A stretch of 64,000 nt of DNA from Leucoraja erinacea (lineage: Eukaryota): assembly GCF_028641065.1 (NCBI RefSeq), contig NC_073396.1, positions 13,454,001 to 13,518,000 of the forward strand. The letters run 5' to 3'. The position numbers were made by a program, and so were the translations under genes. This document shows positions 8,501 through 57,176 of this stretch, one piece after another. The notes beneath the pieces are model-generated. The model worked only from the letters and a program-made list of their open reading frames with translations, searched no databases and had not been told where the DNA came from. The stretch's first letter is position 1; every line of letters starts with the position of its first letter.

Positions 8501-9739
8501 CATGTATATTTTTTCCCAGCAGCAGCAATAGGTTTTGGCGGCACAGTGGTGCAGCCAGTGAGTATACTGCCTCACAACTTCTGCAGCACAGGTCCTGGCT
8601 GACCTTGGTGCAGTCTGTGGAATTTGCATGTTCTTCTAATGACTGTACAGGTTTCCTTTGGGTGTTCCAGTCTCCTCACACTCTCAGGCGAGAGGTTATC
8701 AGTTTAGACCACAATCATATGGAAATCTTTCCAAAACATTGTGATTCAGGAGTGATCTTTCACACTTCATTTCTGTCCCTTTGTGAACTTTTTGATTTAG
8801 GTAAACATCATGGGGTTTGGGGACAGAGTTAAGTGTCACAGTTTGTGCCTTTAAAGTTGTATATTTTTATAAATGACTATAGAGGTTGTTGCCAAAAGCA
8901 CTTCTGAACTGACACCCCTCCTTAGCTTGAAATCACCTCCCGTCTTTCTTTTTACTCCCACTGCTCATTGCAACAGCCTCAGGACTTTCGTGTTTATTAA
9001 TTGTTGCATTTTCAACAGATCAAATGTCTGCAGGATTCTTGTGGTTTTATCACAAGAGGACACGAGTTATCTCAAGAATTGCTTGATACTAGTTTAGCGG
9101 TTGTATTAGAAATGGATTTTCAGAACTAATATCTATAGTTTTAAAACATACATATATCAACAAATGTATTAAAAAAAGCATGATTATAGGAATTTTTAAA
9201 ATATGGTCCTTTACAAAATTGTGGCATAGAAGCAAAGTGCCAGAGCAACAATCATTATGTGAGCCATCCTTTATACAGCACCAGTCCAACTATTTATGCG
9301 ACATTCTTTTTCTGCTTTATTTCATTTTGAATTATCTCCTCGGGCGGTTTGGCTGCGAGAGTGTGGAAAGTGTTGTTGCCTCTGTGAAACTGTTTCTGCA
9401 CAGCACTCTGGCAAAATAGTGAAACATTCCAAGGAGGTTCACAGAGATTTTCGCCAATAGAACCATTAGCAAACCACATGAAGAGATGTGCAAACATGTA
9501 TCCTCCGAGCTGTTTCTGCTCAAGTCTCTGGAGGAAAATTTGAAGCCACAACGTTCTGACTCCTTGAACTACCAGCAAGGCCACAGTGGAAGAATAGAAG
9601 TGGTGTCGGCCATTCAGCCCCCTTGTGCTCTGCTGTTCAAAATGAGCATTGCTGATTCTGTTCTTCCAGTAACGTTTCTCCGCGCTAACTCAAGATTCCC
9701 CGATTCTCTTGATATCTTAAAATTCATTATCTCTGTCTG

Positions 9740-10333
9740 GAATGAATGAATAAGTTTATTGGCCAAGTATTCACATACAAGGAATTTGCCTTGGTGCTCC
9801 ACCCACAAGTGACAACATGACATACAATGACAGTTACGAATGACACATAAAACACTGAATATTAATAATAAAACACCATTGATTAAACATGTGAACCAAA
9901 CAAAATACCAAAGCAAAATGAGGCTACAGATTTTTGGCTGTTGAGTAGAGAAAAAGCTGTTTTTCTGTCTGGCTGTGGCAGCTTTGACAGTCTGGAGTCG
10001 CCTTCCAGAGGGAAGTGATTCAAAGAGTTTGTGGCCAGGGTGAGAGGGGTCAGAGATGATCTTACCCGCTCGCTTCCTGGCCCTTGCAGTGTACAGTTCG
10101 TCAATGGAGGGAAGGTTGCAGCTAATAACCTTCTCAGCTGATCGAACGATTCGCTGCAGCCTCTGGGTGTCGTGCTTGGTGGCTGAGCCAAACCAGACCA
10201 TGATGGAGAAGGTGAGGACAGACTCTACGATGACCGTATAGAATTGGACCATCATTGCCTGTGGCAGATTGTGCTTCCTCAGCTGCCGTAGGAAGTACAT
10301 CCTCTGTTGTGCCTTTTTGACTGAAGTCATTGA
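9740..10333 (-). mobile_element. Rex1/Babar LINE 3' end inserted into an older CR1
   Basis: KKAQQRMYFLRQLRK...ESVLTFSIMVWFGS...DPSHPGHKLFESLPSGRR...KNSFF; aataaa and (attc)n tail; CR1 remnants flank both sides (9590-9740, 10335-10700). Confidence 0.88.
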
Positions 10334-10902
10334 CCAAGCCTCTACAGCTCTTTCGGGTAGAGGAAAGATTCTGCCTGCTTTGTGAAGAAATGTTTCCTTA
10401 TTTTTGTCCTGATTAGCTGTTCCCTTAATATTCAAACCACAACCCTTAGTTCTAAACACATCAGCCAGGGAAAACATCATCCTGTGTCAAGTCTATCCGG
10501 CCAGGATGAATTTGGTATTTAATTAGATAATCTCTCATTCTTCTAAGGTCAAGAGACTACACACCTAATGTGTTTACTCTCTCCTCATCCTACAAACATG
10601 CCATCCCTCGAATTAACCTGGTGAACCTTCATTGCCATATCTCTGTCCTTCCTGAGGTTGGGAAATCAGACATGTATACAATACACCAGTACCTCACTCA
10701 GTATTCAGGATGTATTTATGGCTGCAAGACTGCTAATTGCATCAGCCACTTTTTCGAGGGGCATTGCATTTATTGCACTTATCAGTGGAGCATCAATGAT
10801 GTAAAATGCTTTAATCAGCTGAGTCGGCAAAACAGAATGGCCGATTACAGTGGGCTGTCTGGACAAATTTGGAAATCTGACAAACTGTGTGTTAATACTC
10901 AA

Positions 10903-12003: not shown

Positions 12004-12460
12004 AGACACAAAATGCTCGAGTAATTCAGTGGGTCAGGCAGCATCTCTGGAGAAAAGTAATAGGGTGACGTTTCGGGTCGAGATCCTTCTTTAACTCTCA
12101 GTTTGAAGAAAGGTCTTGACCCGAAACGTCACCTATTCCTTTCCTCCAGAGATGCTGTGAATTTATGGAATTCCCTGCCGCAGAGGGCAGTGGAGGCCAA
12201 GTCACTGGATGGATTTAAGGGAGAGTTAGATAGAGCTCTAGGGGCTAGTGGAGTCAAGGGATATGGGAAGAAGGCAGGCACGGGTTATTGATAGGGGACG
12301 GTCAGCCATGATCACAATGAATGGCGGTGCTGGCTCGAAGGGCCGAATGGCCTCCTCCTGCACCTATTTTTTATGTTTCTCTGCTACCTGACCCTCTGAG
12401 TTACTCCAGCATTTTGTGTCTATCTTCGGTATAAACCAGCACCTGCAGTTCCTTCCTACA
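12004..12460. mobile_element. Inverted pair of Penelope-like terminal repeats A, with a nested CR1
   Basis: Minus arm 12004-12097, plus arm 12098-12157 and 12383-12460 ending in the tail cagttccttcctaca. Confidence 0.8.
12156..12382 (+). mobile_element. CR1/HER1 3' end (young)
   Basis: Near-identical to 997-1222; VNLWNSLPQRAVEAKSLDGFK. Confidence 0.9.
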
Positions 12461-16062: not shown

Positions 16063-16163
16063 GGTACATAAAAATGCTGGAGAAACTCAGTGGGTGCAGC
16101 AGCATCTACGGAGCGAAGGAAATGGGCAACGTTTCGGGTCGAAACCCTTCTTCAGACCTTAAA
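16063..16163 (-). mobile_element. Hammerhead micro-element, subfamily B
   Basis: ggtacataaaaatgctggagaaactcag...cccttcttcagac plus a tail remnant cttaaac; direct repeat aacaatg at 16054-16060 and 16162-16168. Confidence 0.8.
16125..16157 (-). ncRNA. Minimal type I hammerhead ribozyme motif
   Basis: Minus strand gu-CUGAAGA-A-GGGU(UUCG)ACCC-GAAAC-GUU-gcc; perfect stem II; activity untested. Confidence 0.6.
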
Positions 16164-18597: not shown

Positions 18598-18680
18598 AAC
18601 AACGATAATAAAACGTCAATTTAGTAGTTTTGTATTATTCCGACTACATTCTATCTCTGTCCCGTCCACTCCTCTGACAT

Positions 18681-18812
18681 CAGTCTGAAGAAGGATCTCG
18701 ACCCGAAATGTCACCCATTGCTTCTCTCCAGAGATGCTGCCTGTCCCGCTGAGTTACTCCAGCATTTTGTGCCTACCTTCGATTTAAACCAGCATCTGCA
18801 GTTCTTTCCTAC
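18681..18812 (+). mobile_element. Penelope-like terminal repeat A with hammerhead-like core and tail
   Basis: cagtCTGAAGAaggatctcgacccGAAAtGTCacc...gagttactccagcattttgtg...ccagcatctgcagttc. Confidence 0.8.
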
Positions 18813-24859: not shown

Positions 24860-25760
24860 TGCCAGCCCAGTTCATCATTGGTACAGCCTTCCCCATCATC
24901 CAGAGCATCTGCATGAAGTACCGCCTCAAGAAGCCTGCATCTGTCATCAAGGATCCCCTTGCCCTCTTACATAGAAACATAGAAATTAGGTGCAGGAGTA
25001 GGCCATTCGGCCCTTCGAGCCTGCACCGCCATTCAATATGATCATGGCTGATCATCCAACTCAGTATCCAGTACCTGCCTTCTCTCCATACCCCCTTATC
25101 CCCTTAGCCACAAGGGCCACATCTAACTCCCTCTTAAATATAGCCAATGAACTGGCCTCAACTACCCTCTGTGGCAGAGAGTTCCAGAGATTCACCACTC
25201 TCTGTGTGAAAAAAGCTCTTCTCATCCCGGTTTTAAAGGATTTCCCCCTTATCCTTAAGCTGTGACCCCTTGTCCTGGACTTCCCTAACATCGGGAACAA
25301 TCTTCCTGCATCTAGCCTGTCCAACCCCTTAAGAATTTTGTAAGTTTCTATAAGATCCCCTCTCAAACTCCTAAACTCTTGGCCATATCCTCTTCTCACT
25401 GCTACATTGGGTAAGAGATACAGAAGCCTGAAGTCCCACATCATCGTTTTCAGGAGCAGCTATAACTATCAGTTCTTGAACCGACTGGCATAACCCTAAT
25501 CCTACCTTGGCAACACAGCTTACAGCCCACCTCTTGCACTTTTAAGGTATTGCTTTCTAATCCTACTTTGCACTGATGTCTTGTTTTTTTTGCCATCTTT
25601 TTCTCATCGCCTCGTAAAATCTATGTGTAATTTATGTATAGTTTATGTTTTTGTGGGTTGTTTGAGTCTATTTGTCTGAGATGTTGCTGCAAACAAGATT
25701 TTCACTGTACCTGTATGTCATCGTACATGTGCAAATGACAATAAACCCAACATGAACTTG
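24860..25760 (+). mobile_element. Old Rex1/Babar 3' fragment with nested CR1
   Basis: AQFIIGTAFPIIQSI...LKKPASVIKDP, resuming at 25376 (ggccat...gggtaagagatacagaagcctg) and ending ttttcactgtacc...tgacaataaac. Confidence 0.6.
24969..25375 (-). mobile_element. CR1/HER1 3' end (young)
   Basis: LRGDLIETYKILKGLDRLDAGRLFPMLGKSRTRGHSLRIRG..., intact 3'UTR; ctctt on both flanks. Confidence 0.92.
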
Positions 25761-26299: not shown

Positions 26300-26432
26300 T
26301 GGTGGAAGGAACTGCAGATGCTGGTTTACACCGAAGATAGACACAAAATGCTGAAGTAACTCAGTGGGTCAGCCAGCGTATCTGAAGAAAAGGAGTAGGT
26401 GATGTTTCGGATTGAGACTCATTTTCAGACTC
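26300..26432 (-). mobile_element. Penelope-like terminal repeat A
   Basis: gaaggaactgcagatgctggtttacaccgaagatagacacaaaatgctg. Confidence 0.75.
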
Positions 26433-27734
26433 GGACCAGTCTGAGGGAAATTGGGAGGTGGGTGTAACTATGTGTATTCAGTGGGTCCATCGCAGAGTGT
26501 ATAGGCTGATACATAAAATATAATGAGTTTGTGTATTTATTCAAAGACTATTCACAGATTTTTTTTTGGAACTTACTACAATGTTCCATCCCCAAGATTC
26601 TTCATCATAATTGTTAAAACTGTGACAAACCTAAAATGACAATCATTATTCACAACTTGGGTAGGTCAGGCCCACTCACTAGTAGGCAACTGAGTCATCC
26701 TATCACCAACTAGAGAACTGCTGAACTATCATCTACCTAATTGGAGACCCTCGGACTATCTTTCATCAGACTTTACTGGACTTTGTCTTGCACAAAATGT
26801 TATTCCCTTATCCTGCATCTGTACACAGTGGACGGCCTGATTGTAATCATGTATAGTCTTTTCGCTGACTGGATAGCATGCAACAAAAAAACTTTTCATT
26901 GTACTGTGGTGCATGTGATGATGATAAACAAAACTAAACTGAGATTATATATTCTGCATCCATTTTTCTTTGTAAAAAAAAAAGATGATTTCCAATGCAT
27001 AAATATTACAAATTTAACACAAGCAATGGTTTGGGATTTTCACAACAGTGCTGGGGTTAATCTAGCCTCATTACAATTGTTGGAATATCATCGACAATAA
27101 ACTGACCCTCGAAACCTTGAAATGCTTGACTTCTGGACTTAAATGTTGTCTCACCTAGACTCTCAATAGAAACGTCACCTGCTCGCAAGCGTTTAGGGGC
27201 TGGCTTAGCTCAACGACTAGAAAATGCAAATTTAAAAAAAATCTGCAGATGCTGGAAATCCAAAATAAAAACATAAAAATCGCTGGAAACGCTTAGTAGT
27301 TGAGCCAGCATCTGCAGAGGAGAAACAGAGTTTACATTTCTGTTGTAGACCTTTTAGTTGATAAGTCAATAAAGACCATTAGTGGGAGAGAACACTGGAT
27401 CACAATGGTTCATCTAGGAAAGATGTTGTCTTAGAGTTTGAACCAGGTTTGATCCCTACCTCTAGTGCTCTCTGTGTGGAGACAAATGTTCTTCCATGTG
27501 GGCTTCAACGGGCTGCTCGGGTTTCCTCTCATATCCCAAAGACATACAGGTTGGAAGGTTAATTGAGCACCGTACATTGCCCCTGGTGTGAAGGTGAGTG
27601 ATAGAATCTGGGGGGAGGAGGGGAATTGCTGGGAATTTAGGGAGAATAATTTAGGATTTGTGTGAAGGGATGCTTGATGCTGGTGTGGATATAGTGGGTG
27701 GATAATGTTATAATTCTGTGCCAAACACAAAATT

Positions 27735-28512: not shown

Positions 28513-29200
28513 ACGTAGAAACAATGAACTGCAGATACTGGTTTACAACAAAAGGCCACAAAGTGCTGGAGTAACTCAGCGGGCCAGGCAGCATCTCTGG
28601 AGAACGTGAATAGGTGACGTTTCAGGTCGGGACCCTTCTTCAGACTGATTGTGGAGGGTGAGAGAGAAAGAAACCTGGAAGAGAGGAATGGTAGGACCAT
28701 GCCTGCCAAGTAATAGGTGGAAGGCAGACACAAAATGCTGGAGTACCTCAGCGGGTGAGGCAGCATCTCTGGAGAGGAGGAATGGGCGACGTTTCGGGTC
28801 GAGACCCTTCCTCAAGTAATAGGTGGATATATGTGAGAGTGGTTTTTGATAGGCAGATGGTTGGACAAAGGCCAAAGATAAAAAGACAAAAAATGTGTGA
28901 GACAAAAGCATTGAAGAGTTTTGAATTGTGAAGCTAGCGATAGGAATGTTGGTCCAAAGGGAAGGGGAATGGGGGGGAAATAGGTGGGGCACTGGGGAAA
29001 GTGGGGGAGGAAAAGAAAAGGGGTAGATGTGTCGCTAGGTAAAATTGGAGAATTCAATCTTCATATCATTGGGTTATAAGCTATGAGATGATTTTCCGTG
29101 TGGCCTCACGCGAGCAGTGGAGGAGGCCCAGGACAGAAAGATCGGTGTGGCAATGGAAAGAGGAATTAAAATGATTAGCGACTGGGAGATGCTGTGGATC
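28513..29200 (-). mobile_element. Penelope-like element 3' end: GIY-YIG fragment, 3'UTR and two tandem terminal repeats
   Basis: LPVANHFNSSFHCHTDLSVLGLLHC..EATRK (ORF 29081-29293); repeats at 28722-28815 and 28513-28650. Confidence 0.8.
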
Positions 29201-33336: not shown

Positions 33337-34082
33337 TAGACACAAAGTGCTGGGGTAACTCAGCAGGTCAAGCAGCATCTCTGGAGAAAAGGAATAGGTG
33401 ACGTTTTGGGTTGAGACCCTTCATGAGACTGAGAGTCAGGGAAGGGGACACTAAAGGTATGGGAAGGTACAGAACAAAGCAGAGCCTGCATTGATTAGTC
33501 AGGAAAGGTGGAACCCACAATGTCCCTTGTCGGGGATCCCTGGAGAGGAGCTCCGACCGCCGGCCCTGCAGTCTGCGGTGCTTCTGGCTGCGGCGCGGCG
33601 GGGACTTTAAATCTTCAACCGCTGGCCTGTGGCCTACACCAACTTGAAGCCGCGGTCTCCGGTGGGGAGGCACCGATTCAGGACTTATCTGGTCTTACCT
33701 TGCCTGAACATCTGGACGCCCGCAGCGGCGACTGCGGAGAGTTGAGGTACCGACCACGGGGGAAAATGGAGGAGGACGGCCAATTTTTGTGCCTTCCACC
33801 ACAGTGATGAATGCTGTGGTGGATGTTTGTGTCAATTTATATTGTATATTGTGTGTTCTTTTTTTATTGTACCGCTGCTGGCAAATTCATTTCACTTGCA
33901 CTTTATGTGCAAGTGACGAATAAAACTTGACTTGACTTGCTGGAGCAAGTTGTTGTCTGGGGACAAGGTGATAATGAAGGAATACAAATAGTGTAATTAG
34001 GAAGAGGGTTAGGGTGGGGGTGGGATGGAGCATTTTGTGTCTATCTTCAGTGTAAACCAACATCTACAGTTCCTACTTACAC
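33337..34082. mobile_element. Penelope-like element in inverted arrangement, with nested insert
   Basis: Minus arm starts tagacacaaa and continues into 3'UTR homologous to 53400-53560; short plus arm with tail at 34027-34082. Confidence 0.65.
33525..33940 (+). mobile_element. GC/CpG-rich short element with Rex1-type tail
   Basis: CpG-rich body, gccttcca.cacagtg block, aataaaa and (cttga)n tail. Confidence 0.6.
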
Positions 34083-34850: not shown

Positions 34851-35780
34851 TTTTAAGAATTTATGAACTATCAATCTCCACTCTAAAAATACCAAACTGA
34901 CTAGACCTCCATGGTTGCCTGTGGCAATTAATTCTCTTTATCATGCATCTGTACACTGTGGACAGCTCGATTGTAATCATGTATTGTCTTTCCACTGACT
35001 GGTTAGCACACAACCAAACCGTCTCACTGTACCTCGATCAGTGCACGTGACGATAAACTAAACTGAACTAACTAAACTAAATAGATTATCTGGTGTTCAG
35101 CGAAAAATAGTGGTGTGCCCCAAGGACTAGTTAACAAACAGAAAATAGTGAAAACCAAATGTTGGGAAGCAGTGATGGAAGATGCTGCAGGGGTTAGTGT
35201 TGGTCACCCCGGTTTTTTCCATCTGTAGTCATGATTTGGATGTTAGGATCAATTATATCCAATTTTGTTAATGATATAAAGCTGTGTGGCCATGTAGGCC
35301 ATGAGAAGCAGGCACGCAATCTAACTTGACATCATGTTTGGCACAGATAATGTGGGCCAAAGGGCCTGTTCCTGTACTGTTCTGTTCCGTTCCATGTTCA
35401 CAAGAGGTCCAATGGCACACTGCTGCTCTGCTTCTCATGTTGTTATGTTCTTATGATTGCGTAATGATTGCTGCAAAATCATTTACTGTACCCTGCAATT
35501 GGCAGCAGAAATGAATAGAAAACGGTATTTTAATTGCTGGGGTGTGTGGGGGGATTCACAATTTCAATTTTTTTTTTTGACTAAGTGCTTCCCGAGGCTG
35601 CTTTTCATCACTGTCAGTTTCACTCACATCCAAATCATACTGTTATAAAGTTATAGAGTCTTGCAGCGCGGAAACAGATCCTTTGACCCAACTTGCCCAC
35701 ACCGGCCAACATATCCCATCTACACCAGTCCAACCTGCCTGCGTTTGGTCCATATCCCTCTAAACCTGTCCTATCCATAT

Positions 35781-36516
35781 CCATCGCCAAACTCAGACCC
35801 TCTCTCACACCGCCCGCTGCTGAAAGACTCATCCATGCCTTCATCTCCTCCCGACTGGACTATTGCAACTCACTTCTCCTTGGCATCAGCTCCACCTACA
35901 TCAACCGACTCCAACTGGTCCAGAACGCAGCCGCCCGACTCATCACCCACACCAAATCCTGGCATCACATCACTCCAGTCCTCAAACAACTTCACTGGCT
36001 TCCCATCTCCCACCGGATCACCTACAAAATCCTGATCCTCACCTACAAAGCCCTCCACCATCTGGCCCCCCCCCCATATCTCACTGACCTCCTCTCCCCC
36101 TACCAACCCTCACGGTTCCTCAGATCCACATCAACTGGTCTCCTCTCCATCCACAAGTCCAACCTCCGCAGTTTTGGGGACAGAGCCTTCTCCAAGGCAC
36201 CTCCCAGGCTCTGGAACTCCCTCCCCAAACTGATCCGCAATTCCGTGTCCCTCACCATCTTCCAGTCCCGCCTCAAGACCCATCTCTTCACCTCTGCCTA
36301 TCCTTAGCCCCACGTCCCCCTCTCTTTTCATCTGTGCATTAATTGCCTCATACTGTGTTTTGTATTGAATTCTGTATTTACTTTGTTTACTAGTCATGTC
36401 TCTACTATTTATTTCATTCCCCTTACATGTTTTTCCTCTACCTGCTACATTTTTGTAAGGTGTCCTTGAGACTCTTGAAAGGCGCCCATAAATAAAATGT
36501 ATTATTATTATTATTA
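35781..36516 (+). mobile_element. L2 LINE 3' end, ORF2 frame uninterrupted
   Basis: IAKLRPSL...AERLIHAFISSRLDYCNSLL...LQLVQNAAAR...HITPVLKQLHWLP...GDRAFS..PRLWNSLP...RLKTHLF* (stop 36307); 3' stem and (att)n tail; splits a CR1 (35645-35780, 36517-36605). Confidence 0.92.
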
Positions 36517-37605: not shown

Positions 37606-37866
37606 TTAGGTAAGCTCTGATTGTCCACACTGGCAAGTGACAGTCAGCTTGATCAAGTTAACTTGTTTAAGCAGTTGACTTTGATTAAAAATCACCAGCC
37701 CAGCCAGGACAACAGATCTTCATGGTCAGGTCAAGAACCCTGAACTTATAACAACTGAGACTTGAAAATGGCGGCAAACTGGCGACTGTATACTGTCTCA
37801 GTGTACTACTGGTACACACTTATACTCATGCTTTACACAGGCTTAACCAATATATATCTACGTGCT

Positions 37867-37957
37867 ACACAAAAAAACTGGAGAAACTCAGTGGGTGCAG
37901 CAGCATCTATGGAGCGAAGGAAATAGGCAACGTTTCGGGCCGAAACCCTCCTTCAGA
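37867..37957 (-). mobile_element. Hammerhead micro-element B with 9-bp TSD
   Basis: ctacgtgct at 37858-37866 and 37958-37966. Confidence 0.85.
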
Positions 37958-39225
37958 CTACGTGCTTATGTACAGTGATGCTTGTATGGAACTGTATACA
38001 AAAATGAATTTCACTCTAACTCAGTAGACAAATAAAGTACCATACCATACCAATCTGTGTTTTCGCCAATAGTGCAATGCTCCTTGCTGAAAGTTTCACT
38101 GAATATTTTTATTTGAATGTGTAACTTTAATCTGCAGCATTGTATCGAATGGAACTAAGAGTTAGGGCAGGAGATGCCTCTTTGTTTTAGTCCAAAGTAA
38201 AACTTCAATCCACTTTCTTCTTTCTTGTGACCCCGCCCCTCAAGCGGAACATCTGAGACCAACATTAGCAACCCATGGTTCAACACCACAACGTTTAAGC
38301 CTCCTGCCTGCTCATGGAACCTCTTTGCACCACAGGGGGCCTGGAAAATAAAGTTATGTTAAGGAGGGCTGATTGGATAACTTATTGCTATAAATTATGA
38401 ATCCTGCATTTACTTTATAGCTTGCAGATGATCATCTTATTGCACCCCTTTGAACACTGAATTATAGGTTTGAGCTTTTGGCAGGATGTCAGCAATGTAT
38501 TTTGACATGTGCATTTGCCTTCAGATTCAATAACCCCACACCCTTTATTATTGAACCTCAAGGTCATGAAAATAAAAATGCAGAGTATCAATTTTTCAGT
38601 GATGGCGGCCAACTTGCTTTCAACGTCACGCTAAAAGTTACAAGCACACTTTCTTGATGAAATCCGCTAGTTTTAGCAAATTGATAAGTATAGGGGTTCA
38701 ACTGATGCAAACGAGAGCAGGATGGTCAGATTGTCAGGATTGTCACAGTGATTTAATGTCATTCCTGCAATCCCACGTGCGTGCTTCTCGTTCCCCCGTA
38801 GCGCCAAACCTAAAGGATTTGGCTGCTCCTCATTAACAGAAGCCTTTGGCTGCTGCCCAGTCCTCCCCAAGTCCCAGCTAAGCAGAGTATTTATTGATGA
38901 GACAAGGAAATCAATAATGGCTTTACTAAGTAATGACGAAATGATGCATTGTTGTCACCGCTGAAATGTGCAGAAGGACAAATCTTGTCTTAACATTATG
39001 AAACTGAATAACCCTTGTGTGGGAGTAAAATTCACGGACAGTAAATTATAGACAGTGTGAACAACCAAGTGAAAGGCAAAACGGATCCAGCAAATAACCC
39101 AATTGCTGGAAATTATAGTGAGATTGCTGTGGCTTCAATTTACCAGATGGCAGTAATCACTACATACTAAGTTAGATACCTACAGGCAAATACAGTTAGA
39201 ACATTTGTTTACATGTGTACATTTA

Positions 39226-43810: not shown

Positions 43811-44961
43811 GATTGATCACAGAAGGAATCACACAGACAAATAAGACATAGGAGCAGAATTAGGCCAGTCAGCACATCGAGTCTACTCCACCATTCAATC
43901 GTGGCTGATCTATTTTTCTCACTCAACTCTATTTTCCTTCCTTCTCTCCGAAACCTTTGATGCCGAGGAGACCCTCATCCTCCACCACAATGCCCATATC
44001 CATACTCTCCAAAAAGATCTTACAGCTCTCCTATTTCTTCTCCACCCTACACTCCTCCTCCCTCTCCCACCACTCTGTGATACCACAGACCCTCCAACCT
44101 CACAGCTGCAACCGCTACCATAATGGTGAAATGAGAGGGAATTCTGACACTGAGCTCACTAATGTGATCAACCTCAGAAAATGGAATGAAAGGTTTGCTT
44201 CTTGTTCCGATGGCAGCTGGAGTTAAGAGATAGTTCCCGGTGCTCACTGCAAATCTCAGAAACACAAATATGAGTCTTAGCTCCTGTGATTGTAATTGTG
44301 AAGGGAATGGAACTCAATTTCTCAGAAGCAATATCAGAAACAAACTCAGAAGAATTTCCTTAAATTCGACCTTTCTGGCCGATGGAATGATTTTCTTGAT
44401 ATGCCTCATTTCCCTTAAAACCTTTGGTCCCGTGGTCTCAGATCCAGCCTGGGTTTGTTTTCCATGGAGCTGAGGAAATTGAGGTGGGTACCTATTCATG
44501 TTGAATGCATTTATGAAGGGCATGGATAGGGCAGATAATAGGAAACTTACAGGAATTTAAAACTAGGTTTAGGATAAGAGGTGAATTTTAGAGGAGAACG
44601 GAGGAAGATTTATTTTCATGCAGAGAGGGATTGGAATCTGGAACTTGCTGGTTGAGGGGATGAAGGAGAGAAAGACCGATAACATTTAAGAAGTATCTGA
44701 ATGAGCATTTGAACTGCAAATGCAAAGAAGGCTATAGACCATATACTGGTAAATGGGACTAGTATAATTAGATACTTTAGTATAGTTAGTATAGACAAGA
44801 TGGGCTGAAGGGCGTGCATCTATGTCGTATGAGCCTATCTCTTAAAGGCTCCATGACAGTCTATTTCTAAGACTATGTTTCTATGTCCCTGTCTCTCAGA
44901 CTCGATGGTTCCAGGACTATGACTATCACTCTATCTCTGAAACTCTATGATAAGAGCGTAA

Positions 44962-45055
44962 GGTACACAAAATTGCTGGAGAAACTCAGCGGGTGCAGCA
45001 GCATCTATGGAGCGAAGGAAATAGGCGACGTTTCGGGCCGAAACCCTTCTTCAGA
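44962..45055 (-). mobile_element. Hammerhead micro-element B (94 bp) with perfect 15-bp TSD
   Basis: atgataagagcgtaa at 44947-44961 and 45056-45070. Confidence 0.9.
45024..45055 (-). ncRNA. Minimal type I hammerhead ribozyme motif
   Basis: u-CUGAAGA-A-GGGU(UUCG)GCCC-GAAAC-GUC-gcc; all core nucleotides intact; activity untested. Confidence 0.62.
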
Positions 45056-45959
45056 ATGATAAGAGCGTAACCTGAAGGTCAGGATTCTATTTAAAATGAA
45101 TAGTTGATTGAGATTTAACTGTCTCTGTGTTTCTACTGCTTCCTGCGTGCATTTTATTTCTTAGCTTCGCTCCTGAAAGGGGTCCAGATTTTAGCGGATC
45201 CCCCCAGTCCTAGTCTTGCCGACCAAGGCGAATAGTTCCTCTATCAATTCTGAAAAAGTTAATCTCTCCAGAGTTACAGTAGCATCACTGTCCCGAGACT
45301 TTAAAAAAGAACAAATGTCCTATTGTGCTTCGAGTGAAACATCACGCTGCAGATGGCAGCTCACGATGGCTTTGCCAACTCCGGAATGTGTCCCTGGCTG
45401 TTTCATCGTGACCTTTTGCAAGTGACCCACCCTCACACTCAGCCCATTGTTCACCCAAGACGTCAGCCCTCTCATCACCCAGTTGTTCGCTTCTTGACTG
45501 CCGGCCACAAGCCTTTGCCCCGACACCTCCATCAAATATTTTTTATAAATAATAAACAGAAGACTTCAAAGAAAATGAAATTTTAAAAAGCATGCAGTTT
45601 CCTTCAATGCTCTTCTTGTGGCATGGCCAGTTTTTCGCTTGCAGTAATGCCCCGGGAATTAACCTTCATTTCCTGGAGAGTCCAGAACACATTTGGACCA
45701 TTGGCAGCCTTCGTTCGAGGCTGCAGTGAGGCAGGGCTGTTAAAGACAAGCTACACAACCAGACCAACATTTCTCTCTCTAGTCAGGAAAAGGCAGGTTG
45801 TGTGGCAAGTTCAATTCTAAAATCTCTATCGGGCAGACTGAAGATTACATACAAAACATGAATAAGAAGCAGGAAGACCACTTGGCCCATCAAGACAGCT
45901 CTGCCATTTAATAAGATTAATTGGCTAATATTTGGACATAACAAGAGATAGGTTGTAGC

Positions 45960-46225
45960 GTTGAGCTGAGATGGGTAAAGTTTAAAGGAGATGTCAGGGC
46001 AATTATTTTCCACAGAGGGGGGCGGGTGCCAGGAACACACAGCTGAGGGTGGTTTTTGGGAGGTTTTTAGATGGGCGCATGGATATGCTGGGAATGGAGG
46101 GATATGGATCATGTGCAGGCAGATGAAATTAGTTTAACTTGGCATCATGTTCAACGCAGGCATGGTGGGCTGAAGGGCTTATTCCTGTGCTGCACTGTTC
46201 TCCGTTCTATTTCCTATGTTCTATG
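45960..46225 (+). mobile_element. CR1 3' fragment
   Basis: gagggatatggatcatgtgcaggcaga...gaagggc.t.ttcctgtgctg.actgttct. Confidence 0.7.
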
Positions 46226-46465
46226 CATATAAAATCAGGTTCATGTATGCCAACAGAACTGTGTGGATAAACATAACCCCGCAGAAGAATGTTGCATGCT
46301 GTGGTTTCTTTTTGTTGGAAAATAAGAAGATGGTAAGGTTGGCAAAAATCCTATGTGATGAATTTGCCAGTGAGCAATAAAAGGGTTAAAGTGTGTAAAA
46401 TTGTTCAACCCCTTTCACAATTGTAGACACCTTTATTTAAAGTTGCACGGAGGATTGTCCAGGGA

Positions 46466-46622
46466 AATTATCTGGTCATTATCATGGTTGTGTGTGTGGG
46501 GGATTACTGTGCATACAGTATATGAATTACTATGTCTCCTACACTCCAGTGACCACACTTCAGAAAGTATTTAATTGAGTGAAACATTTGGGAAGTCCTG
46601 CACTTGCGAGAGGTGTACAAGG
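46466..46622 (+). mobile_element. Deu-domain SINE 3' remnant
   Basis: attatctggtcattatca...cagtgaccacacttcagaaagtatttaattg...tttgggaagtcctg. Confidence 0.55.
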
Positions 46623-47490
46623 TTCCCCTTTCTCTATTCAGGAAGGAACATATTCTGGTTTTTCTCTCACTCCCTTCAAATCCTGTTTGGATAATTTACT
46701 GGCAAACTGGTTATCTGTTATGAAAGGTCAGTGTATGTTTATCTTTACTATCTGTGACCGAAACTTAGAACCAACCGAGGCACGTGAAAGGCTACGGTTT
46801 GGGTTATTATTGTTTGAATGCAGCTACTGTTGGTCTGCAACAGAAACGGAACCTCATTAACAGACTGTATATGACTGACCTGAATTATGGCATTGCTTTC
46901 TAAGTGCGTTCAATGGGTCTCACTAGTCTTAGATTTAATGGAAGAGGAAATGCTTGCAGGTCAATGGTCTACTGTGCCTCATTACAGTTGTATGAACACC
47001 AGTAAATCAGCAGTGAAGTTTTGCTCCAATTTAACCAGATTGGTGCTGCCTGATGTAAGTGGGTGAGACCAGCAGAGTCAGTGACTGCCTTTTGTGGCCC
47101 AATGGGACAGACCCTTGCTGGAATAACACAAAAGCCGTTTGGAACTAAATGTGCAGGATCTGCACAGAGTTAGCAGGGTTAAGTCCTCGTGGAGGTTGGT
47201 CTGCTACATTTGACCCCCTCACTGGGTAAAAAATAAAGAGCAAAAAAAAACCCCAAAAAACAATGCTGGAGGAACTGAGCAGGTCAAGCAGCATCTGCGG
47301 AGGTAAATATACAGATGACATCTCGGATCAGGATCCTTCTTCAAATAAGCAATAAAACAGGGCAGCGTGCCAAAGTGCTCCAGGTTCAGCTCCTGCTGCA
47401 TTTGAGGGGAGTGGGTGACACGGAGTAAAGAGCCAGCAATGTCGCCGCCTCAAGGTCCTCCAATCTAGCGATCCACTATTTACCACTCCA

Positions 47491-47750
47491 GAGGAAAGAA
47501 ACGGAGAAAAAGAAAGAGAAAAGGAGAAAAAGAGAAAGAAAGAGAAAGCAAAAGAGAGAGAGAGGCGAAAGAAAGATGGAAAGAAAGAAAAAAAAAGAAA
47601 GAGAAACAATGAGAGAAAGAGAGATAGATAGAGAGAAAAAGAAAAAGAGAAAAAGAGAAAGAAAAAGAGAGAAAGAGAGAAAATGAAAGAGATGGAGAGA
47701 AAGGGAGTGAAAGAAAGGGAGAGAAAGAAAGGTGAAGGAGTGTGGGAAAG
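47491..47750 (+). repeat. Polypurine (GA-rich) low-complexity tract
   Basis: ~260 bp almost entirely A/G. Confidence 0.95.
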
Positions 47751-48794
47751 TGAGTGACTAAATAAGTAAGAGCGGCTGAATCCACAAGGTCCTGATTCAG
47801 AGGTTAGGTGTGAGTTTCTGAGCCGCAGCTGAGATAGCTGGAACTTCATCTGGGAGTCTCAGTATCGTAGTATTGCCAGCATTGATGAGCAAATTTAGAA
47901 TTACTGTTTGTCTTTGTCTTCAGTCATTTTTCCTCATCCTTGTGTATCTCTGGACCACCTGTAGGTTTTGCCGAGGATCTGGGACATTTTCTGCTGTCGA
48001 GAAGGTCAAGGGAAGGTTTGACAGAGATGGTCACAGTTTTCAATGGTTTGACGAGCAGATATTGAGGAACTGTTCCCAGGGGCTGAAGTGCATTCTGTAA
48101 GGGCGAGTGAAGCAGAGAACATGGATTTAAAGAGCAAAATTGAAAAATCATTTAAACATAGTGATTGCAGTTGAGAAAGTTCTGAATGAAAGTAGATTCT
48201 TGTGGATAAATACATGAGAGATGTTACCAGCCAGGGAAAGGATTTATCTTTAAATGCAACACTTAATCGATAGAACCAACACAACAGGGAATCCAATGGC
48301 CTCCTCCTGAGCTATAATTCTATGACTAATTATTTTGAGTTTGTGATTGTAGCGCTCACTATACACCAGTCGAGACTACACATTAACACTAGGGATATGA
48401 GTAATATTGGATAGTGTCCAGGAAAAAGTGACCTTGATCAATGAAAACAAGCTTCACATTAGCAAGCTGTTAGCGAGGCTGGTGTTTTATGACGAGTGTT
48501 GAAGAATTTTCCAAAACAGAATTAAATTAACGTTGTGCCTTTGCAAATGCATTGGCCAGATTTTCCAATAGTTGCAGGAAAAGAAACGGTTATATATTTT
48601 CAAGGATTTCCTGACTCTCCGGTTTATCGAATGTCACCCCTTCTATAATTCCTCATTATGTCTTTCTTAATGTTGCAGTTTGGAGAGATACTCATTTTGC
48701 AATTGACAAAGAGGTTGGGTTAGTTGTCAATGCAAATGCAGGAAATAGTCTGAAGCGCATTGTGTAAAATGCTTTGTGAATGAATGGATTGAAT

Positions 48795-49192
48795 GGGCTT
48801 ATATTCACTGGAATTTAGAAGGATGAGAGGAGATTTTATTGAAACATGTAAAATTCTTAAGGGATTGGACAGGCTAGATGCAGGAAAAATGTTGCCAATG
48901 TTGGGGGAGTCCAGAACCAAGGCTCACAGTTTAAGAATAAGGGGTAGGCCATTTAGGAATACTTTTTCACCCAGAGAGTTGTGAATCTGTGGAATGCTCC
49001 GCCACAGAAGGCAGTGGAGGTCAATTCACTGGATGTTTTCAAGAGTAGATATAGCTCTTTGGGCTAACGGAATCAAGGGATATGGAGAGAAAGCAGGAAC
49101 GGGGTACCGATTTAGGATGATCATATTGAATGGTGGTGCTGGCTTGAAGGGCTGAATGGCATTACTCCTGCACCTATTTTCTATGTTTCTAT
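48795..49192 (+). mobile_element. CR1/HER1 3' end
   Basis: GLYSLEFRRMRGDFIET.KILKGLDRLDAGKM.PMLGESRT. Confidence 0.9.
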
Positions 49193-49219
49193 CTGTATGA
49201 AGAACACAGATGAGAGGGT

Positions 49220-49402
49220 ACACAAAAATGCTGGTGAAACTCAGCGGGTGCAGCAGCATCTATGGAGCGAAGGAGGTAGGTAACGTTTCGGACCGAAACC
49301 CTTCTTCAGACTCCTTCACTCCATAGATGCTGCTGCGCCCGCTGAGTTTCTCCAGTATTTTTGTGTACCTTCGGTTTTCCAGCATCTGCCGTTCCTTCTT
49401 AA
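49220..49402. mobile_element. Palindromic hammerhead element B (inverted arms plus tail) with 14-bp TSD
   Basis: acagatgagagggt at 49206-49219 and 49403-49416; arms ~49218-49275 and ~49312-49369 are reverse complements. Confidence 0.88.
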
Positions 49403-49774
49403 ACAGATGAGAGGGTTATCAGCCTGTGATGTCCTCACCAGAAGGGACAATTAGTTGAGGGCAGACTTCATCCATGTATCTGGAGGGACTTGGTAGCATC
49501 ACCAACTGATCCTGAAGGACTTGTTTTGGATGGCGAGTGGTCGAGTGAACCAAAATAAGTTATAAACCAACGTATGCTTGCTTTCCCCAGTCTACCTGTT
49601 GAAGATGCATCTGCTCCTGATGAGAGTAATGCCTGCAAAGTGCATATACTGATAAAGCCCTGTCCATCCATCAGCAAAGCAAAGGAAGGTGTTACCGACA
49701 ATGCAATTGAGTGCAAATCGCTTGCCAGTATATCAGACCTCCATCTCAAAACACTGGCCTCACAAAATCCTGAC

Positions 49775-49940
49775 CTCAGAGTAGGGGAATCGAGGACCTT
49801 AGGACATAGGTTCAAGGTGAAGAGGAAAAGATTGAATAGGAATCCGAGGGGATAACTTTTTCACACAAAGGTTGGTGGGTGTATGGAACAAGCTGCCAGA
49901 GGAGGTAGTTGAGGCTGGGACTATCCCATTGTTTAAGGAA
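49775..49940 (+). mobile_element. CR1 fragment
   Basis: RVGESRTLGHRFKVK...VGVWNKLPEEVVEAG. Confidence 0.8.
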
Positions 49941-53199: not shown

Positions 53200-53666
53200 G
53201 ATTTGGTTGCCAAACGTTTTCACTCCCGTTATTCTCATACTGATCTTTAGGCCTCCTCCATTGTCAGAGTGTGGCAACATACAAATTGGAGGTGGAACAG
53301 CACCTCATAATTTGCTTGGGCAGCTTACAACCCAGCAGTATTAATGTTGATTTCTCTAATTGAAAATAACCCTTGCATTCCCTGCCTTTCCGTCCATCCC
53401 CCACCCTAGTCATCCTGCTAGTTCACCTGTTTGCATCCCTTCAATATCATCTCTTCCACAGCCAACAATGGACCATTGTGGGCTCCACCTTTCCCTGGTC
53501 ATCGGTGCCCGCTCTGATTTGTTCTGAACCTTTTCATACCTCTAGTTTCCCTCCCCGCTGACTCACAGTCTGATGAAGGGTCTTGGCCCAAAACCTCATC
53601 TATTCCTTGTATCCAGTGATGCTGCCTGACCCGCTGAGTTACTCCAGCATTTTGTGTCTATCTTCA
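53200..53666 (+). mobile_element. Penelope-like element 3' end: GIY-YIG C-terminus, 3'UTR and hammerhead terminal repeat
   Basis: GLLHCQSVATYKLEVEQHLIICLGSLQPSSINVDFSN*, then cagtCTGATGAagggtcttggccc at 53566 and repeat A. Confidence 0.82.
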
Positions 53667-54444
53667 CAGTATGTAATTAGGTGCGTAGGTTGATGGGTCA
53701 AATGTTAAAATCTTCACTGTGGATTCGAGTAAGTCCGTGAGGCCAAGTGTACATCTTGATCAAGTGAAATGAGAACCATTTGCACCCACTACACACGTAT
53801 TGCATTGACTCAAGAGGAGAGAAGTGCTCTTCTGATCTCTTTGGGTGGCCCTGGATTATTGTAATGTTCTAAGCACAAACATTATCAATGGATCAATGCT
53901 GCTTTAATTGATTATAGGGCAATGTGATCTTAAATAGGATATTGTTGAGTCCCTGTAAGATTTGTAAATAAGAGGAGCTACCTGCATTGAAGATATTTAA
54001 TTCAGTCGTTCAGATTAGTTCCCAACGCAAAAGGTGTTTGGAATACAAACTGAAGCCAGAGTATGGACAGGGAGGGGTAGTGCTCATAGTTTTGTTTTCC
54101 CATGGGTTCAGTGGGATAACTATTTGAAATTATGCAATTAAGTCTTTAGTTCTGAATAAGCCTTTGTCTGGTTAAGACAGGAAATAAGCCGCAGCTTCAT
54201 TTATAGAAAGAAAATTCAGATAGCATTTTCAGTTAAATCTATTGCTTGAAGTCATGATTAAATCAGATAGGGCTACGGTATATAGATACCAGTAATTGAG
54301 TGTTACACATTGACTGTTGATACTAAAGTGTAATGGTTCAAATCACATGAGAAATCTGAGAAAGGAGTGGTGGATGTTGTGGGGCTTCTGAGAGTTATTC
54401 CTTGGTCAAACACCTCCTCACAGTTGGACTAGCCTGTGAGTCCG

Positions 54445-54790
54445 AGAGTTATAGAATCATAAAGTCATACAGTGGTCCAACTTGCCCACATCAGCCAAAA
54501 TGTCCCATCTACACTAGTTCCACTTGCCCATGTTTGGTCCATAGCCCTCTAAACCTATCCTATCCATGTACCTGTCTAACTGATTCTTAAATGTTGAGAG
54601 AGTCTCTGCCTCAACTACCTCCTCCGGCAGCTTGTTCCATACACCCACCACCCTTTGTATGAAAAAGTTACCCCTCAGATTCATATAAAATCTTTTCCCC
54701 TTCATCTTAAACCTGTGCCCTCTGGTTCTCGATTCCCTCACTCTGGGCAAGAGACACTGTGTGTCCACCCGATCTATTCTTCTCATGAGT
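54445..54790 (-). mobile_element. CR1 3' end
   Basis: PRVRESRTRGHRFKMKGKRF...GNFFIQRVVGVWNKLPEEVVEA. Confidence 0.88.
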
Positions 54791-55225
54791 CCCAGCCTTC
54801 TTAATCTCTCCTTCATCTCTAAGAGATAGAAGGGTACAGGCCAAGTGCTGGAAGGCAGGAGTAATACAGGTGAGTGCCTAGTGGTCAGCATTCACATGGT
54901 GGGCTGAATGGCCTGTCTCCATGAGCGTGTGAACCAGTGGCTAAGTGTAGAATTGGCTAAGGGGAAGCCTGTTGCAATAAACAGCAACGCAACGGAGTGA
55001 GTGCTCAGTGGGAGAGTTTGCGGTCAACATTGGAAGACAAGTGTCCAAAAGATGAAGCAGCTTTCCAAACTACTTGTAGGGTAAAATGGGCGCATCCCAA
55101 CCGGTCACCTGACAGATGGTTCTGGTCAAGGAACATCCAAAAAAAGAAAATGTGACACATCAGACTCCCGTCCCGGGACTAATAACATATCTCTGCTACA
55201 GCCAGAGGTCAGCTCAACAAGGTCT

Positions 55226-56410: not shown

Positions 56411-57079
56411 AGTAAGGGGGGAACATTTGACAGAGGGAGCTCAGCGGGACTTCTGCTTTCCTCACTGATACCAAGCTATTTCATTTCTCCCCCAAAGATT
56501 CCCTTTACCTGCTGGGTTCCTGAAAGATGGGAAAATCTGGTCGTTCACAATTAAACTTGCAAGCAACATTAAATCAGACACTAGCTGCCAGTAATGGTTT
56601 ATTATTGTCAACGGTACCGAGATACAGTGAATGACTTTTCTTCGCGTGCCATCCCAGGTAACTCATCCATACACGAGGGAGTGCAAAAGGGAATATATGC
56701 AGAGCGCAGGATGTAGTGTTGCCGCTACAGAGAAAGTGCAGATTAAAATAAAATACAAGGGCCACAATGAGAGATAGAATAGAAGGTCGGCAATTCATCC
56801 TTTGCATATGACAGGTGGGATAACAGCAGGGAAGAAGCTGTTCCTGATTTTAGTGGTAGATGCATTCGAGCTTTTATATCTTCTGCCAAACAGAGTGGGG
56901 AGAAGAGGATAGAATCAGGGTGTACGTGGCCCTTGCTCACTAATCTAATCGCCAAGCTGCCTCCCGGGAATGACTAGGAAGGAACTGCAGATGCTGGTTT
57001 AAATCGATGAATATATTAAATGCTATTAATATAATTAATATTACCCCATCCCCCCTCCCACCAGCCCCCACCTCTACTT

Positions 57080-57176
57080 TCAATCTGAAGAAGGGTCCGA
57101 CCCAAATCATCACCTATTTTTTTTCTTCATAGAGGCTGCCCGACCCGCTGAGTTACTCCAGTATTTGGTGTCTATC
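57080..57176 (+). mobile_element. Penelope-like terminal repeat A
   Basis: tCTGAAGAagggtccgaccc...cccgctgagttactccag. Confidence 0.7.

What the first reader, a model, noticed from the sequence alone, without database searches (positions are those of the whole stretch)
44947..45070. ~94-bp mobile micro-element consisting of little more than a hammerhead ribozyme plus a hairpin-rich arm, with long TSDs
Seen: a 94-bp insert between perfect 15-bp direct repeats. Its minus strand starts at CUGAAGA-A-GGGU(UUCG)GCCC-GAAAC-GUC. Sister copies at 37867-37957 (9-bp TSD), 16063-16163 (7-bp) and 49220-49402 (14-bp) have nearly the same start point and break at the same ttcaga(c) position. Stem II pairing is retained across copies (U-G vs U-A, G-C vs G-U; UUCG in subfamily B, CUCG in A). 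Known: Penelope-like elements carry minimal type I hammerheads whose palindromic helix III (AC/GU) is proposed to work as a dimer. Inference: this is a young, non-autonomous, ribozyme-bearing retro-element (retrozyme/SINE-like) mobilised by a Penelope-like element in a chondrichthyan. I do not know of a description of it as a defined family.
Basis: partly seen in the sequence, partly recalled or inferred. Interest (0 to 1): 0.82.

Follow-up and report, generated by a model that had tools for sequence, protein, structure and literature searches.

The report
Solo Penelope tail copy, hammerhead motif
A 94-base piece from the tail end of a Penelope-like jumping gene, carrying that group's known minimal hammerhead-ribozyme motif, was copied into this spot recently (two related species still show the empty site); it is an ordinary product of a very abundant family, although its fixed start point is not yet explained.

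Summary
A 94-bp insert (44962-45055, minus strand) lies between perfect 15-bp direct repeats. Contigs of two related organisms cross the site without the insert and with one copy of the 15-mer, so it is a real, recent insertion.

It is the 3'-terminal module of a Penelope-like element (PLE):
- Two older copies sit about 200 bp downstream of decayed GIY-YIG ORF ends on the same strand.
- The 3' ends fall in two groups about 35 bp apart, the PLE "tail" signature.
- Head-to-head inverted pairs and 7-15 bp target-site duplications occur.

The profile finds 37 hits, 6.1% of the window. The hammerhead motif meets four of five sequence criteria for PLE minimal hammerheads. Helix I is missing because the element starts at the base before CUGAAGA, and no Rfam hammerhead model matches. 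Starts cluster there (16 of 37); none lie at the predicted cut site.

It is neither a retrozyme nor a SINE. Most likely it is a dead-end by-product of internally initiated PLE reverse transcription.

The scan has noted this family before elsewhere in this genome (396 notes). It is a new member of a known kind, of modest interest.

The parts
44947..44961 (.). target-site duplication, left copy (15 bp)
   Evidence: Identical to 45056-45070. Only one copy is present in the empty-site contigs of runs X7 and X10.
44962..45055 (-). 94-bp insert: the PLE 3'-terminal module without the tail (young subfamily B)
   Evidence: Absent from X7 record 24 and X10 record 1. It is 92-93% identical to the copies at 16063, 37866 and 49217.
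45027..45054 (-). minimal hammerhead motif: CUGAAGA, one unpaired A, helix II GGGU/GCCC with loop UUCG, GAAAC, GUC; predicted cut after 45027
   Evidence: Perfect match to the core pattern. Only one base (45055) lies 5' of C3, so there is no helix I strand inside the insert. No Rfam hammerhead match.
44962..45026 (-). 65-nt arm downstream of the predicted cut site, ending at the 'no-tail' 3' end
   Evidence: Conserved blocks AGATGCTG, CTGAG and CCAGCA. The fold is no more stable than shuffles, z = +0.44.
45056..45070 (.). target-site duplication, right copy (15 bp)
37867..37957 (-). sister copy of subfamily B without tail, with a 9-bp duplication at 37858-37866 and 37958-37966
16063..16156 (-). 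sister copy of subfamily B without tail; only a loose 7-bp flanking repeat
49217..49402 (.). head-to-head pair inside a 14-bp duplication: a full unit on the minus strand (49217-49310) joined to a 5'-truncated unit with a 33-bp tail on the plus strand (49311-49402)
53250..53670 (+). old PLE 3' end: decayed GIY-YIG ORF tail (53250-53360), about 205 bp of 3' UTR, then the hammerhead unit (from 53569)
   Evidence: Frames. tblastn with P0013 gives 62% identity over 37 aa. The profile hit covers 53461-53670.
28517..29194 (-). second old PLE 3' end: ORF remnant 29090-29194 and a unit with tail at 28517-28707; a younger unit (28720-28814, 15-bp duplication) is nested in its 3' UTR

Best explanation
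The insert is a retro-copy of the last 94 nt of a Penelope-like element (PLE). This is the segment that carries the family's minimal hammerhead motif and the arm where the PLE reverse transcriptase starts.

Shown:
- It is an insertion with a 15-bp target duplication, made after the split from two related organisms.
- The motif strand is the PLE sense strand.
- The unit is the 3' end of PLEs.
- The family has two alternative 3' ends about 35 bp apart, head-to-head inverted pairs and duplications of variable length.

Inferred:
- The PLE protein nicked the target and started reverse transcription inside an RNA that carried the module, at the first of its two start sites, which gives a copy without the tail. 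This is what was shown in vitro for the anole PLE.
- The cDNA ended at a recurrent point, the base before CUGAAGA.
- That point is not the ribozyme cut site, so the hammerhead did not make the end.
- The template was probably a PLE transcript, or any host transcript running through an older copy.
- The tail-less solo copy lacks helix I. By analogy with the anole element it also lacks the RNA downstream of the start site that the protein needs. It is therefore most likely a dead-end by-product, not a self-propagating ribozyme element.
For: - Empty site in X7 record 24 and X10 record 1. Both junctions are probably filled in X3, but with only 26 and 25 letters inside the insert.
- Decayed GIY-YIG ORF ends lie upstream on the same strand at two copies. 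The matching public protein P0013 has an RYIDD motif and a GIY-YIG match of 20.9 bits, below the 22.6 cut-off.
- The 3' ends are bimodal: 11 of 37 at profile columns 197-213 and 16 of 37 at 230-244. This matches the optional 30-40 bp tail and the two reverse-transcription start sites of PMC11167929 (main text read).
- Three head-to-head pairs occur, near 12006/12104, 49217/49285 and 56206. The PLE protein nicks and extends both strands (PMC11167929), and inverted 5'-truncated copies are a stated PLE hallmark (PMC8557442, passages).
- Duplications of 7-15 bp.
- 16 of 37 hits start in columns 101-114 and 0 of 37 in columns 136-145, around the cut site.
Against: - No intact PLE and no PLE-linked copy of the young subfamily B is in the window; 0 of 5 B copies extend upstream.
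- The GIY-YIG match of the comparison protein is below Pfam's cut-off.
- The pieces of the window's own ORF remnant match no Pfam family.
- The sharp 5' edge is not explained by ordinary 5' truncation.
- The 'dead-end' step rests on analogy with one lizard element.
- Only assembled contigs were available, so RNA ends could not be seen.
Confidence: 0.72

Rival explanations
1. The unit is a distinct, self-propagating non-autonomous micro-element of 94-127 nt. It has its own master copies and consists of just the cis signals that the PLE protein recognises, and it is mobilised in trans. This is, without the ribozyme-processing part.
For: - Sharp common start: 16 of 37 hits. TSD-backed starts lie at -4, 0, 0 and +2, and the fold-back pair's complete (inverted) unit also begins at unit position 1.
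- All 5 subfamily-B copies in the window are short forms.
- Flanks of similar copies in run X16 are heterogeneous beyond both edges, with agreement 0.44 and 0.54.
- Summed contig depth over the unit is very high, although the tool warns that this is not a copy number.
- Non-autonomous PLE derivatives are known in Chlamys elements (PMC8557442, passages) and are argued for animal retrozymes (bioRxiv 10.64898/2026.07.22.740005).
Against: - No promoter or tRNA-like part.
- Tail-less copies lack any sequence 3' of the start site, which the anole protein requires up to +172 (PMC11167929).
- Older units are plainly the ends of ORF-bearing PLEs.
- The sample of B copies is only 4 events.
Confidence: 0.24
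2. The copies are ordinary, randomly 5'-truncated PLE debris. The shared start point is a chance effect or an artefact of how the copies were found.
For: High 5' truncation is typical of PLEs (PMC8557442, passages). Seven of 37 hits do extend further upstream and 14 start further in.
Against: 16 of 37 starts fall within 14 of 244 profile columns. About 2-3 would be expected if starts were spread evenly (my arithmetic). Four TSD-backed solo starts and the start of the complete unit in the fold-back pair lie within 7 bases of each other.
Confidence: 0.04
3. The unit is a retrozyme: a hammerhead unit that is cut out of multimeric transcripts, circularised and retro-copied.
For: The hammerhead core is better conserved than the rest of the unit: 0.933 against 0.832 identity, p = 0.0016. 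Retrozymes related to PLE terminal repeats are reported in one chondrichthyan (bioRxiv 10.64898/2026.07.22.740005, results read).
Against: - No tandem array of the unit.
- The unit starts 29 nt upstream of the cut site, not at it; 0 of 37 hits start there.
- Helix I is absent.
- No Rfam hammerhead match.
Confidence: 0.03
4. It is a DNA transposon (MITE), or an element whose RNA is the opposite strand, with ...CTTCTTCAGA as a fixed 3' end.
For: One end is fixed and the other varies, which at first sight suggests a 3' end at TTCAGA.
Against: - There are no terminal inverted repeats (sequence).
- Duplication length varies from 7 to 15 bp.
- The PLE ORF remnants lie upstream on the motif strand.
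- The variable end is not a continuum but falls in two groups, as for the PLE tail.
Confidence: 0.01

Closest known systems
Minimal hammerhead motifs in the terminal repeats of Penelope-like elements (Cervera and De la Pena 2014, PMC4209133)
   Same: - Core boxes CUGANGA, GAAA and GUC.
- An unpaired base between positions 9 and 10.1.
- The G10.1-C11.1 pair.
- Palindromic AC/GU in place of helix III.
- Mostly dispersed single copies, thought to be truncated PLEs.
- Dual motifs on opposite strands.
   Different: The solo unit starts one base before C3, so helix I (4-5 bp in their families, 2 bp in D. virilis) cannot form from element sequence. Older copies with upstream sequence offer at most 2 pairs. 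The family is from a chondrichthyan, a group not named in the text I read.
PLE 'tail' and internal initiation of reverse transcription (Frangieh et al. 2024, PMC11167929; Craig et al. 2021, PMC8557442)
   Same: - Two alternative 3' ends about 35 bp apart, downstream of the hammerhead.
- Inverted head-to-head copies.
- Insertion does not depend on ribozyme cutting.
- No ends at the cut site.
   Different: The distance from the cut site to the first end is 65 nt here, against about 85-92 nt in the anole element. Whether the ORF starts inside the unit, as it does in the anole, is not known here. The strong preference for one 5' end is not described in the text I read.
Animal non-LTR retrozymes (PMC7229834, abstract only; Li, Clavereau and Pollet 2026, bioRxiv 10.64898/2026.07.22.740005)
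   Same: Short, non-coding, hammerhead-bearing and related to PLE terminal repeats. Monomer 'solo' copies are reported.
   Different: Retrozymes are defined by head-to-tail tandem units with complete type I hammerheads that yield circular RNA. Here the copies are dispersed singly with target duplications and have an incomplete hammerhead.
Schistosome SINE-like elements with hammerheads (as described in the review PMC6765202, passages)
   Same: Short interspersed retro-copies that carry a hammerhead.
   Different: Those elements have a promoter followed by a complete hammerhead. Here there is no promoter or tRNA-like part, and the parent is a PLE.

Membership tests
PLE minimal hammerhead (criteria of PMC4209133) | Conserved core CUGANGA ... 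GAAA ... UH | tested here: met
   Four perfect matches and 10 with at most one mismatch in the window, against 0.03 expected. The copy under study is a perfect match at 45027-45054.
PLE minimal hammerhead (criteria of PMC4209133) | [quoted passage not shown] | tested here: met
   An A follows CUGAAGA in 17 of 19 aligned copies. The first helix II pair is G-C in 14 and G-U in 3 of 19 copies.
PLE minimal hammerhead (criteria of PMC4209133) | Palindromic 15.2-16.2 (AC/GU) in place of helix III, allowing a dimer | tested here: met
   GAAAC-GUC is seen in the sequence. Dimer formation itself was not tested.
PLE minimal hammerhead (criteria of PMC4209133) | Helix I of about 4-5 bp (2 bp in D. virilis) | tested here: not met
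   The solo unit has one base 5' of C3. In copies with upstream sequence only U-A and G-C can pair (reading).
PLE minimal hammerhead (criteria of PMC4209133) | Compensatory changes in helix II across families | tested here: inconclusive
   89.5% of cells are paired and 2 cells have changes on both sides, but 199 of 500 shuffles do as well.
Hammerhead ribozyme (Rfam models) | Match to a curated hammerhead covariance model | tested here: not met
   No match at gathering score in the window. No hammerhead match at E up to 10 in three local searches.
Hammerhead ribozyme | Self-cleavage after GUC | not testable with these tools
   Only assembled contigs were available, so no RNA ends could be seen. 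0 of 37 genomic copies start at the cut site.
Penelope-like element, 3'-terminal fragment | Unit lies downstream of an RT/GIY-YIG ORF on the same strand | tested here: met
   ORF-tail remnants at 53250-53360 (+) and 29090-29194 (-) lie about 200 bp upstream of units. The comparison protein P0013 has RYIDD and a sub-threshold GIY-YIG match.
Penelope-like element, 3'-terminal fragment | Optional 30-40 bp tail (two alternative 3' ends) | tested here: met
   Ends: 11 of 37 at columns 197-213 and 16 of 37 at 230-244. The tail is 33 bp at 49370-49402.
Penelope-like element, 3'-terminal fragment | Inverted 5'-truncated partner copies and target duplications of variable length | tested here: met
   Three head-to-head pairs. 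Duplications of 7, 9, 9, 9, 10, 14, 15 and 15 bp.
Non-LTR retrozyme | Head-to-tail tandem units, each with a complete hammerhead | tested here: not met
   Tandem Repeats Finder lists no array of the unit. The two same-strand neighbours at 28560 and 28728 are separate insertions.
Non-LTR retrozyme | Circular RNA intermediates | not testable with these tools
   No raw RNA reads were available.
SINE | Internal polymerase III promoter or a tRNA/5S/7SL-derived head | tested here: not met
   ARAGORN finds 0 tRNA-like genes in the window. No Rfam match over the unit. Promoter boxes were judged by eye only.

The most novel reading that the evidence does not exclude
The 94-nt unit (127 nt with the tail) is the in-vivo minimal template of a Penelope reverse transcriptase. 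It would be a self-contained module, hammerhead domain plus start-site hairpin, that the enzyme picks out of any transcript. Its sharp 5' edge at hammerhead position 2.1 would mark a defined RNA end or a programmed stop. The hammerhead domain would then serve as a boundary or protein-binding element rather than as a cutter. On this reading the module has been copied in very large numbers and fills about 6% of this window.
Probability: 0.22. Interest if true: 0.55.

Novelty: new member of a known kind. Interest (0 to 1): 0.3.

Why it matters
- A Penelope-like element was active recently in this chondrichthyan lineage. The site is empty in organisms whose flanks differ by about 2-4%.
- The terminal module alone makes up 6.1% of this window.
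- The two classes of 3' end agree with the two start sites of reverse transcription found in vitro for a lizard element. This gives independent genomic support for that mechanism in a distant vertebrate.
- The fixed 5' edge at the first hammerhead base, which is not the cut site, is a concrete and testable oddity. It argues against the idea that the ribozyme trims these templates.
- For annotation, such units should be masked as PLE ends. They should not be called ribozyme genes, SINEs or retrozymes.

Tried and rejected
- **Opposite-strand element with a fixed TTCAGA 3' end.** Considered because one end is fixed. Rejected because the ORF remnants lie on the motif strand and the other end falls in two groups.
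- **MITE.** Rejected: no terminal inverted repeats, and the duplications vary in length.
- **Ribozyme-made 5' ends.** Rejected: 0 of 37 starts lie at the cut site.
- **'Hairpin-rich arm'.** The 94-mer folds no better than shuffles, z = +0.44, with 127 of 200 shuffles at least as stable. Four of the five tail-bearing copies folded do place the AGAUGCUG/CAGCAUCU stem in the best fold, with no covariation to test.
- **Pfam on the window's ORF pieces.** Two of the three pieces matched no family. The third gave only a sub-threshold match to an unrelated family, RP-C (16 bits, cut-off 24.4).
- **phmmer with the 39-aa piece.** Gave 12 weak hits, mostly short fragments or host gene models ending in the same tail.
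- **A larger sample of copies.** Two exact-pattern scans of the metagenome collection found nothing.
- **A full-length chondrichthyan PLE locus.** So the 5' terminal repeat, the ORF start and a B-type parent were not examined.
- **Papers and supplements.** Lunse et al. 2017 (PMC5785218) is not held, and I know it only from reference lists. Supplementary files were not opened. The supplementary figures and tables of PMC4209133, PMC11167929 and the 2026 preprint may list chondrichthyan families or start-point data that bear on novelty.
- **Dfam and Repbase** could not be queried.
Full report
**Observation.** The 15-mer ATGATAAGAGCGTAA occurs at 44947-44961 and again at 45056-45070, with exactly 94 bases between. 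Read on the minus strand, the insert begins TCTGAAGAAGGGTTTCGGCCCGAAACGTC. A blastn of the 94-mer against the window gives 24 matches. Four loci are 92-93% identical:
- 16063-16156;
- 37866-37957;
- 49217-49310;
- its inverted neighbour 49285-49369, which is a truncated copy.

The copy at 37867-37957 has a 9-bp duplication. The pair at 49217-49402 has a 14-bp duplication. The repeat at 16063 is a loose 7-mer with extra bases at both junctions.

**Census in the window.** I built a profile from 17 copies and searched the window with nhmmer. It finds 37 hits covering 3857 bp, which is 6.1% of the non-N bases. In profile coordinates:
- the unit starts at column 111;
- the predicted cut (after GUC) follows column 139;
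- copies end either near columns 197-213 or near 230-244.

The starts are distributed as follows: 16 of 37 in columns 101-114, 7 of 37 further upstream, 6 in 115-135, 0 in 136-145 and 8 later. The ends are distributed as follows: 11 of 37 at 197-213, 16 of 37 at 230-244 and 10 elsewhere. Local alignment edges are uncertain by a few bases. Among copies with a flanking duplication, four solo units start at -4, 0, 0 and +2 relative to the first T, and the complete, inverted unit of the fold-back pair also begins at unit position 1. Two further copies carry 58 and 108 bp of upstream sequence.

**It is an insertion, and a recent one.** One search found runs of the source organism (A) and of relatives that hold progressively fewer of the stretch's 31-mers: B 0.71-0.81, C 0.53-0.61, D 0.46-0.47. 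I laid contigs of B, C, D and one putative RNA run on 44400-49900.
- **Organism C.** Record 24 (1977 nt) matches 44400-44946 and continues without a break at 45056-45994.
- **Organism D.** Record 1 (2015 nt) does the same.
- Both skip 109 bp, which is the insert plus one 15-mer. This is what an empty target site looks like.
- **Organism B.** Two contigs run from the flanks into the insert, to 44987 and from 45031. They have only 26 and 25 letters inside it, fewer than the 31 the tool asks for. The filled state there is probable, not certain.
- **Flank differences.** B has 7 other letters in 1093, C has 30 in 1486 and D has 50 in 1486 (table 8). The insertion therefore post-dates a split of roughly 2% divergence.

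A precise deletion in both C and D is the only alternative, and it is far less likely.

**What it is.**
- The frames there end in ...KLEVEQHLIICLGSLQPSSINVDFSN followed by a stop, about 205 bp before the unit.
- A phmmer search with that 39-aa piece found 12 weak hits that share the motif.
- A region search with one of them gave P0013. This is a 422-aa protein with RYIDD and a GIY-YIG match of 20.9 bits, just under Pfam's 22.6 cut-off.
- tblastn of P0013 against the window hits 53250-53360 (+) and 29090-29194 (-), each about 200 bp upstream of a unit on the same strand. It also hits two further remnants without a unit.

So the motif strand is the sense strand of a Penelope-like element, and the unit is its 3' end. 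The two classes of 3' end match two published descriptions. One is the optional 30-40 bp 'tail' of PLEs (PMC8557442, passages). The other is the two adjacent internal start sites of reverse transcription shown for the anole element (PMC11167929, main text read). That paper also shows that the protein nicks and extends both strands. This fits the three head-to-head pairs seen here. It also fits the recurrent opposite-strand joints in contigs of C and D (table 5).

**The hammerhead.** I tested the motif against the features listed in PMC4209133 (text read).
- The core is present.
- The extra base after position 9 is present, as are the G10.1-C11.1 pair and the AC/GU palindrome.
- Helix I is not present. 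The solo unit has a single base 5' of C3, and older copies with upstream sequence can form only two pairs.
- No Rfam hammerhead model matches, at gathering score or at E up to 10 in three local searches.
- Helix II pairing (89.5% of 76 cells) does not exceed the shuffled controls.
- Core bases outside CpG sites are better conserved than the rest of the unit: 0.933 against 0.832, one-sided p = 0.0016. Blocks in the arm and tail are conserved as well or better: 0.958 for CCAGCATCTGCAGTTC.

This fits selection on the master elements for both the motif and the start-site region. It says nothing about the activity of solo copies. In the anole element the ribozyme needs the protein, is dispensable for insertion, and leaves no RNA ends at its cut site (PMC11167929).

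**Mechanism.**
- Shown: a target duplication, an empty site, PLE ancestry, two 3' end classes and a non-random 5' end that is not the cut site.
- Inferred: reverse transcription started internally at the first start site on an RNA carrying the module and ended at the base before CUGAAGA.

Why it ends there is open. My candidates, in order, are these:
1. The RNA's own 5' end (a transcription start or a trimmed ribonucleoprotein footprint).
2. A stop or template switch at the folded or protein-bound hammerhead domain.
3. A short master element.

Older copies have a pyrimidine-rich stretch and CAG just before the unit. In D. virilis Penelope an intron ends at the 5' end of helix I (PMC4209133), 121 nt downstream of the transcription start (PMC2377424, passages). 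The resemblance is a lead only. The anole protein needs RNA up to +172, well past its start sites. For that reason I expect tail-less solos to be dead ends.

**Known or new.** The following have all been described:
- dispersed single minimal hammerheads from truncated PLEs;
- tails;
- inverted partners;
- non-autonomous PLE derivatives.

A 2026 preprint derives animal retrozymes from PLE terminal repeats and sampled one chondrichthyan (results read; supplements not seen). I found no paper that names this family, and I could not check Dfam or Repbase. The scan itself holds 396 notes with these words from this genome. Two follow-ups, s1-877665 and s1-878683, reached the same identification. This report adds the empty-site proof, the end-point statistics and the ORF linkage by tool.

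**Limits.**
- The sample is one 64-kb window.
- Only contigs, not reads, were available.
- One putative RNA run shows the unit inside contigs of 537 and 703 nt with unlike flanks. This is co-transcription at most.

Noticed in passing
window 49206-49416: Fold-back insertion inside a 14-bp duplication. A complete unit on the minus strand is joined at its first base to a plus-strand unit that starts near unit position 38 and carries the 33-bp tail. Contigs of runs X7 (2) and X10 (4) show opposite-strand joints at the equivalent positions (45049 with 49312), so the junction seems to recur at other loci.
   Followed up: partly
window 53500-53568, 33429-33490 (-), 18640-18683, 28645-28700 (-), 57040-57083, 26430-26462 (-): Six older copies have a pyrimidine-rich stretch with a CTGAC-like motif and CAG directly before the first base of the unit, like a 3' splice site. 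In D. virilis Penelope an intron ends at the 5' end of helix I. No donor site or spliced RNA was found here.
   Followed up: partly
profile columns 162-164, e.g. window 45003-45005 (-): A conserved ATG lies 23 nt downstream of the predicted cut site. The frame stays open through the tail in 3 of the 4 tail-bearing copies that keep the ATG, out of 10 examined. In the anole element the ORF starts inside the hammerhead. Whether this ATG starts the PLE ORF was not tested.
   Followed up: partly
window 28720-28814 within 28517-29194 (-): A younger tail-less unit with a 15-bp duplication is nested in the 3' UTR of an older PLE remnant.
   Followed up: yes
protein P0003 (public gene model), residues about 440-499: A gene model that its source names a neuromedin-U receptor has a normal 7TM domain but ends in the PLE endonuclease tail motif. 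This is probably an annotation artefact or an exonised PLE fragment.
   Followed up: no
window 48816-49183 and 46056-46239, 49736-49900: Other very high-copy repeats flank the fold-back insertion. Summed contig depth is 10^5-10^7 against tens in unique sequence. They were not identified.
   Followed up: no
window 9614-10480 (-), 35693-36307 (+), 25061-25444 (-), 54514-54891 (-): ORF fragments that look like the C-terminal parts of LINE reverse transcriptases. This classification is from recall and was not tested.
   Followed up: no
window 47490-47731: GA-rich microsatellite-like array. Read laying skipped 47497-47692 as a repeat.
   Followed up: no
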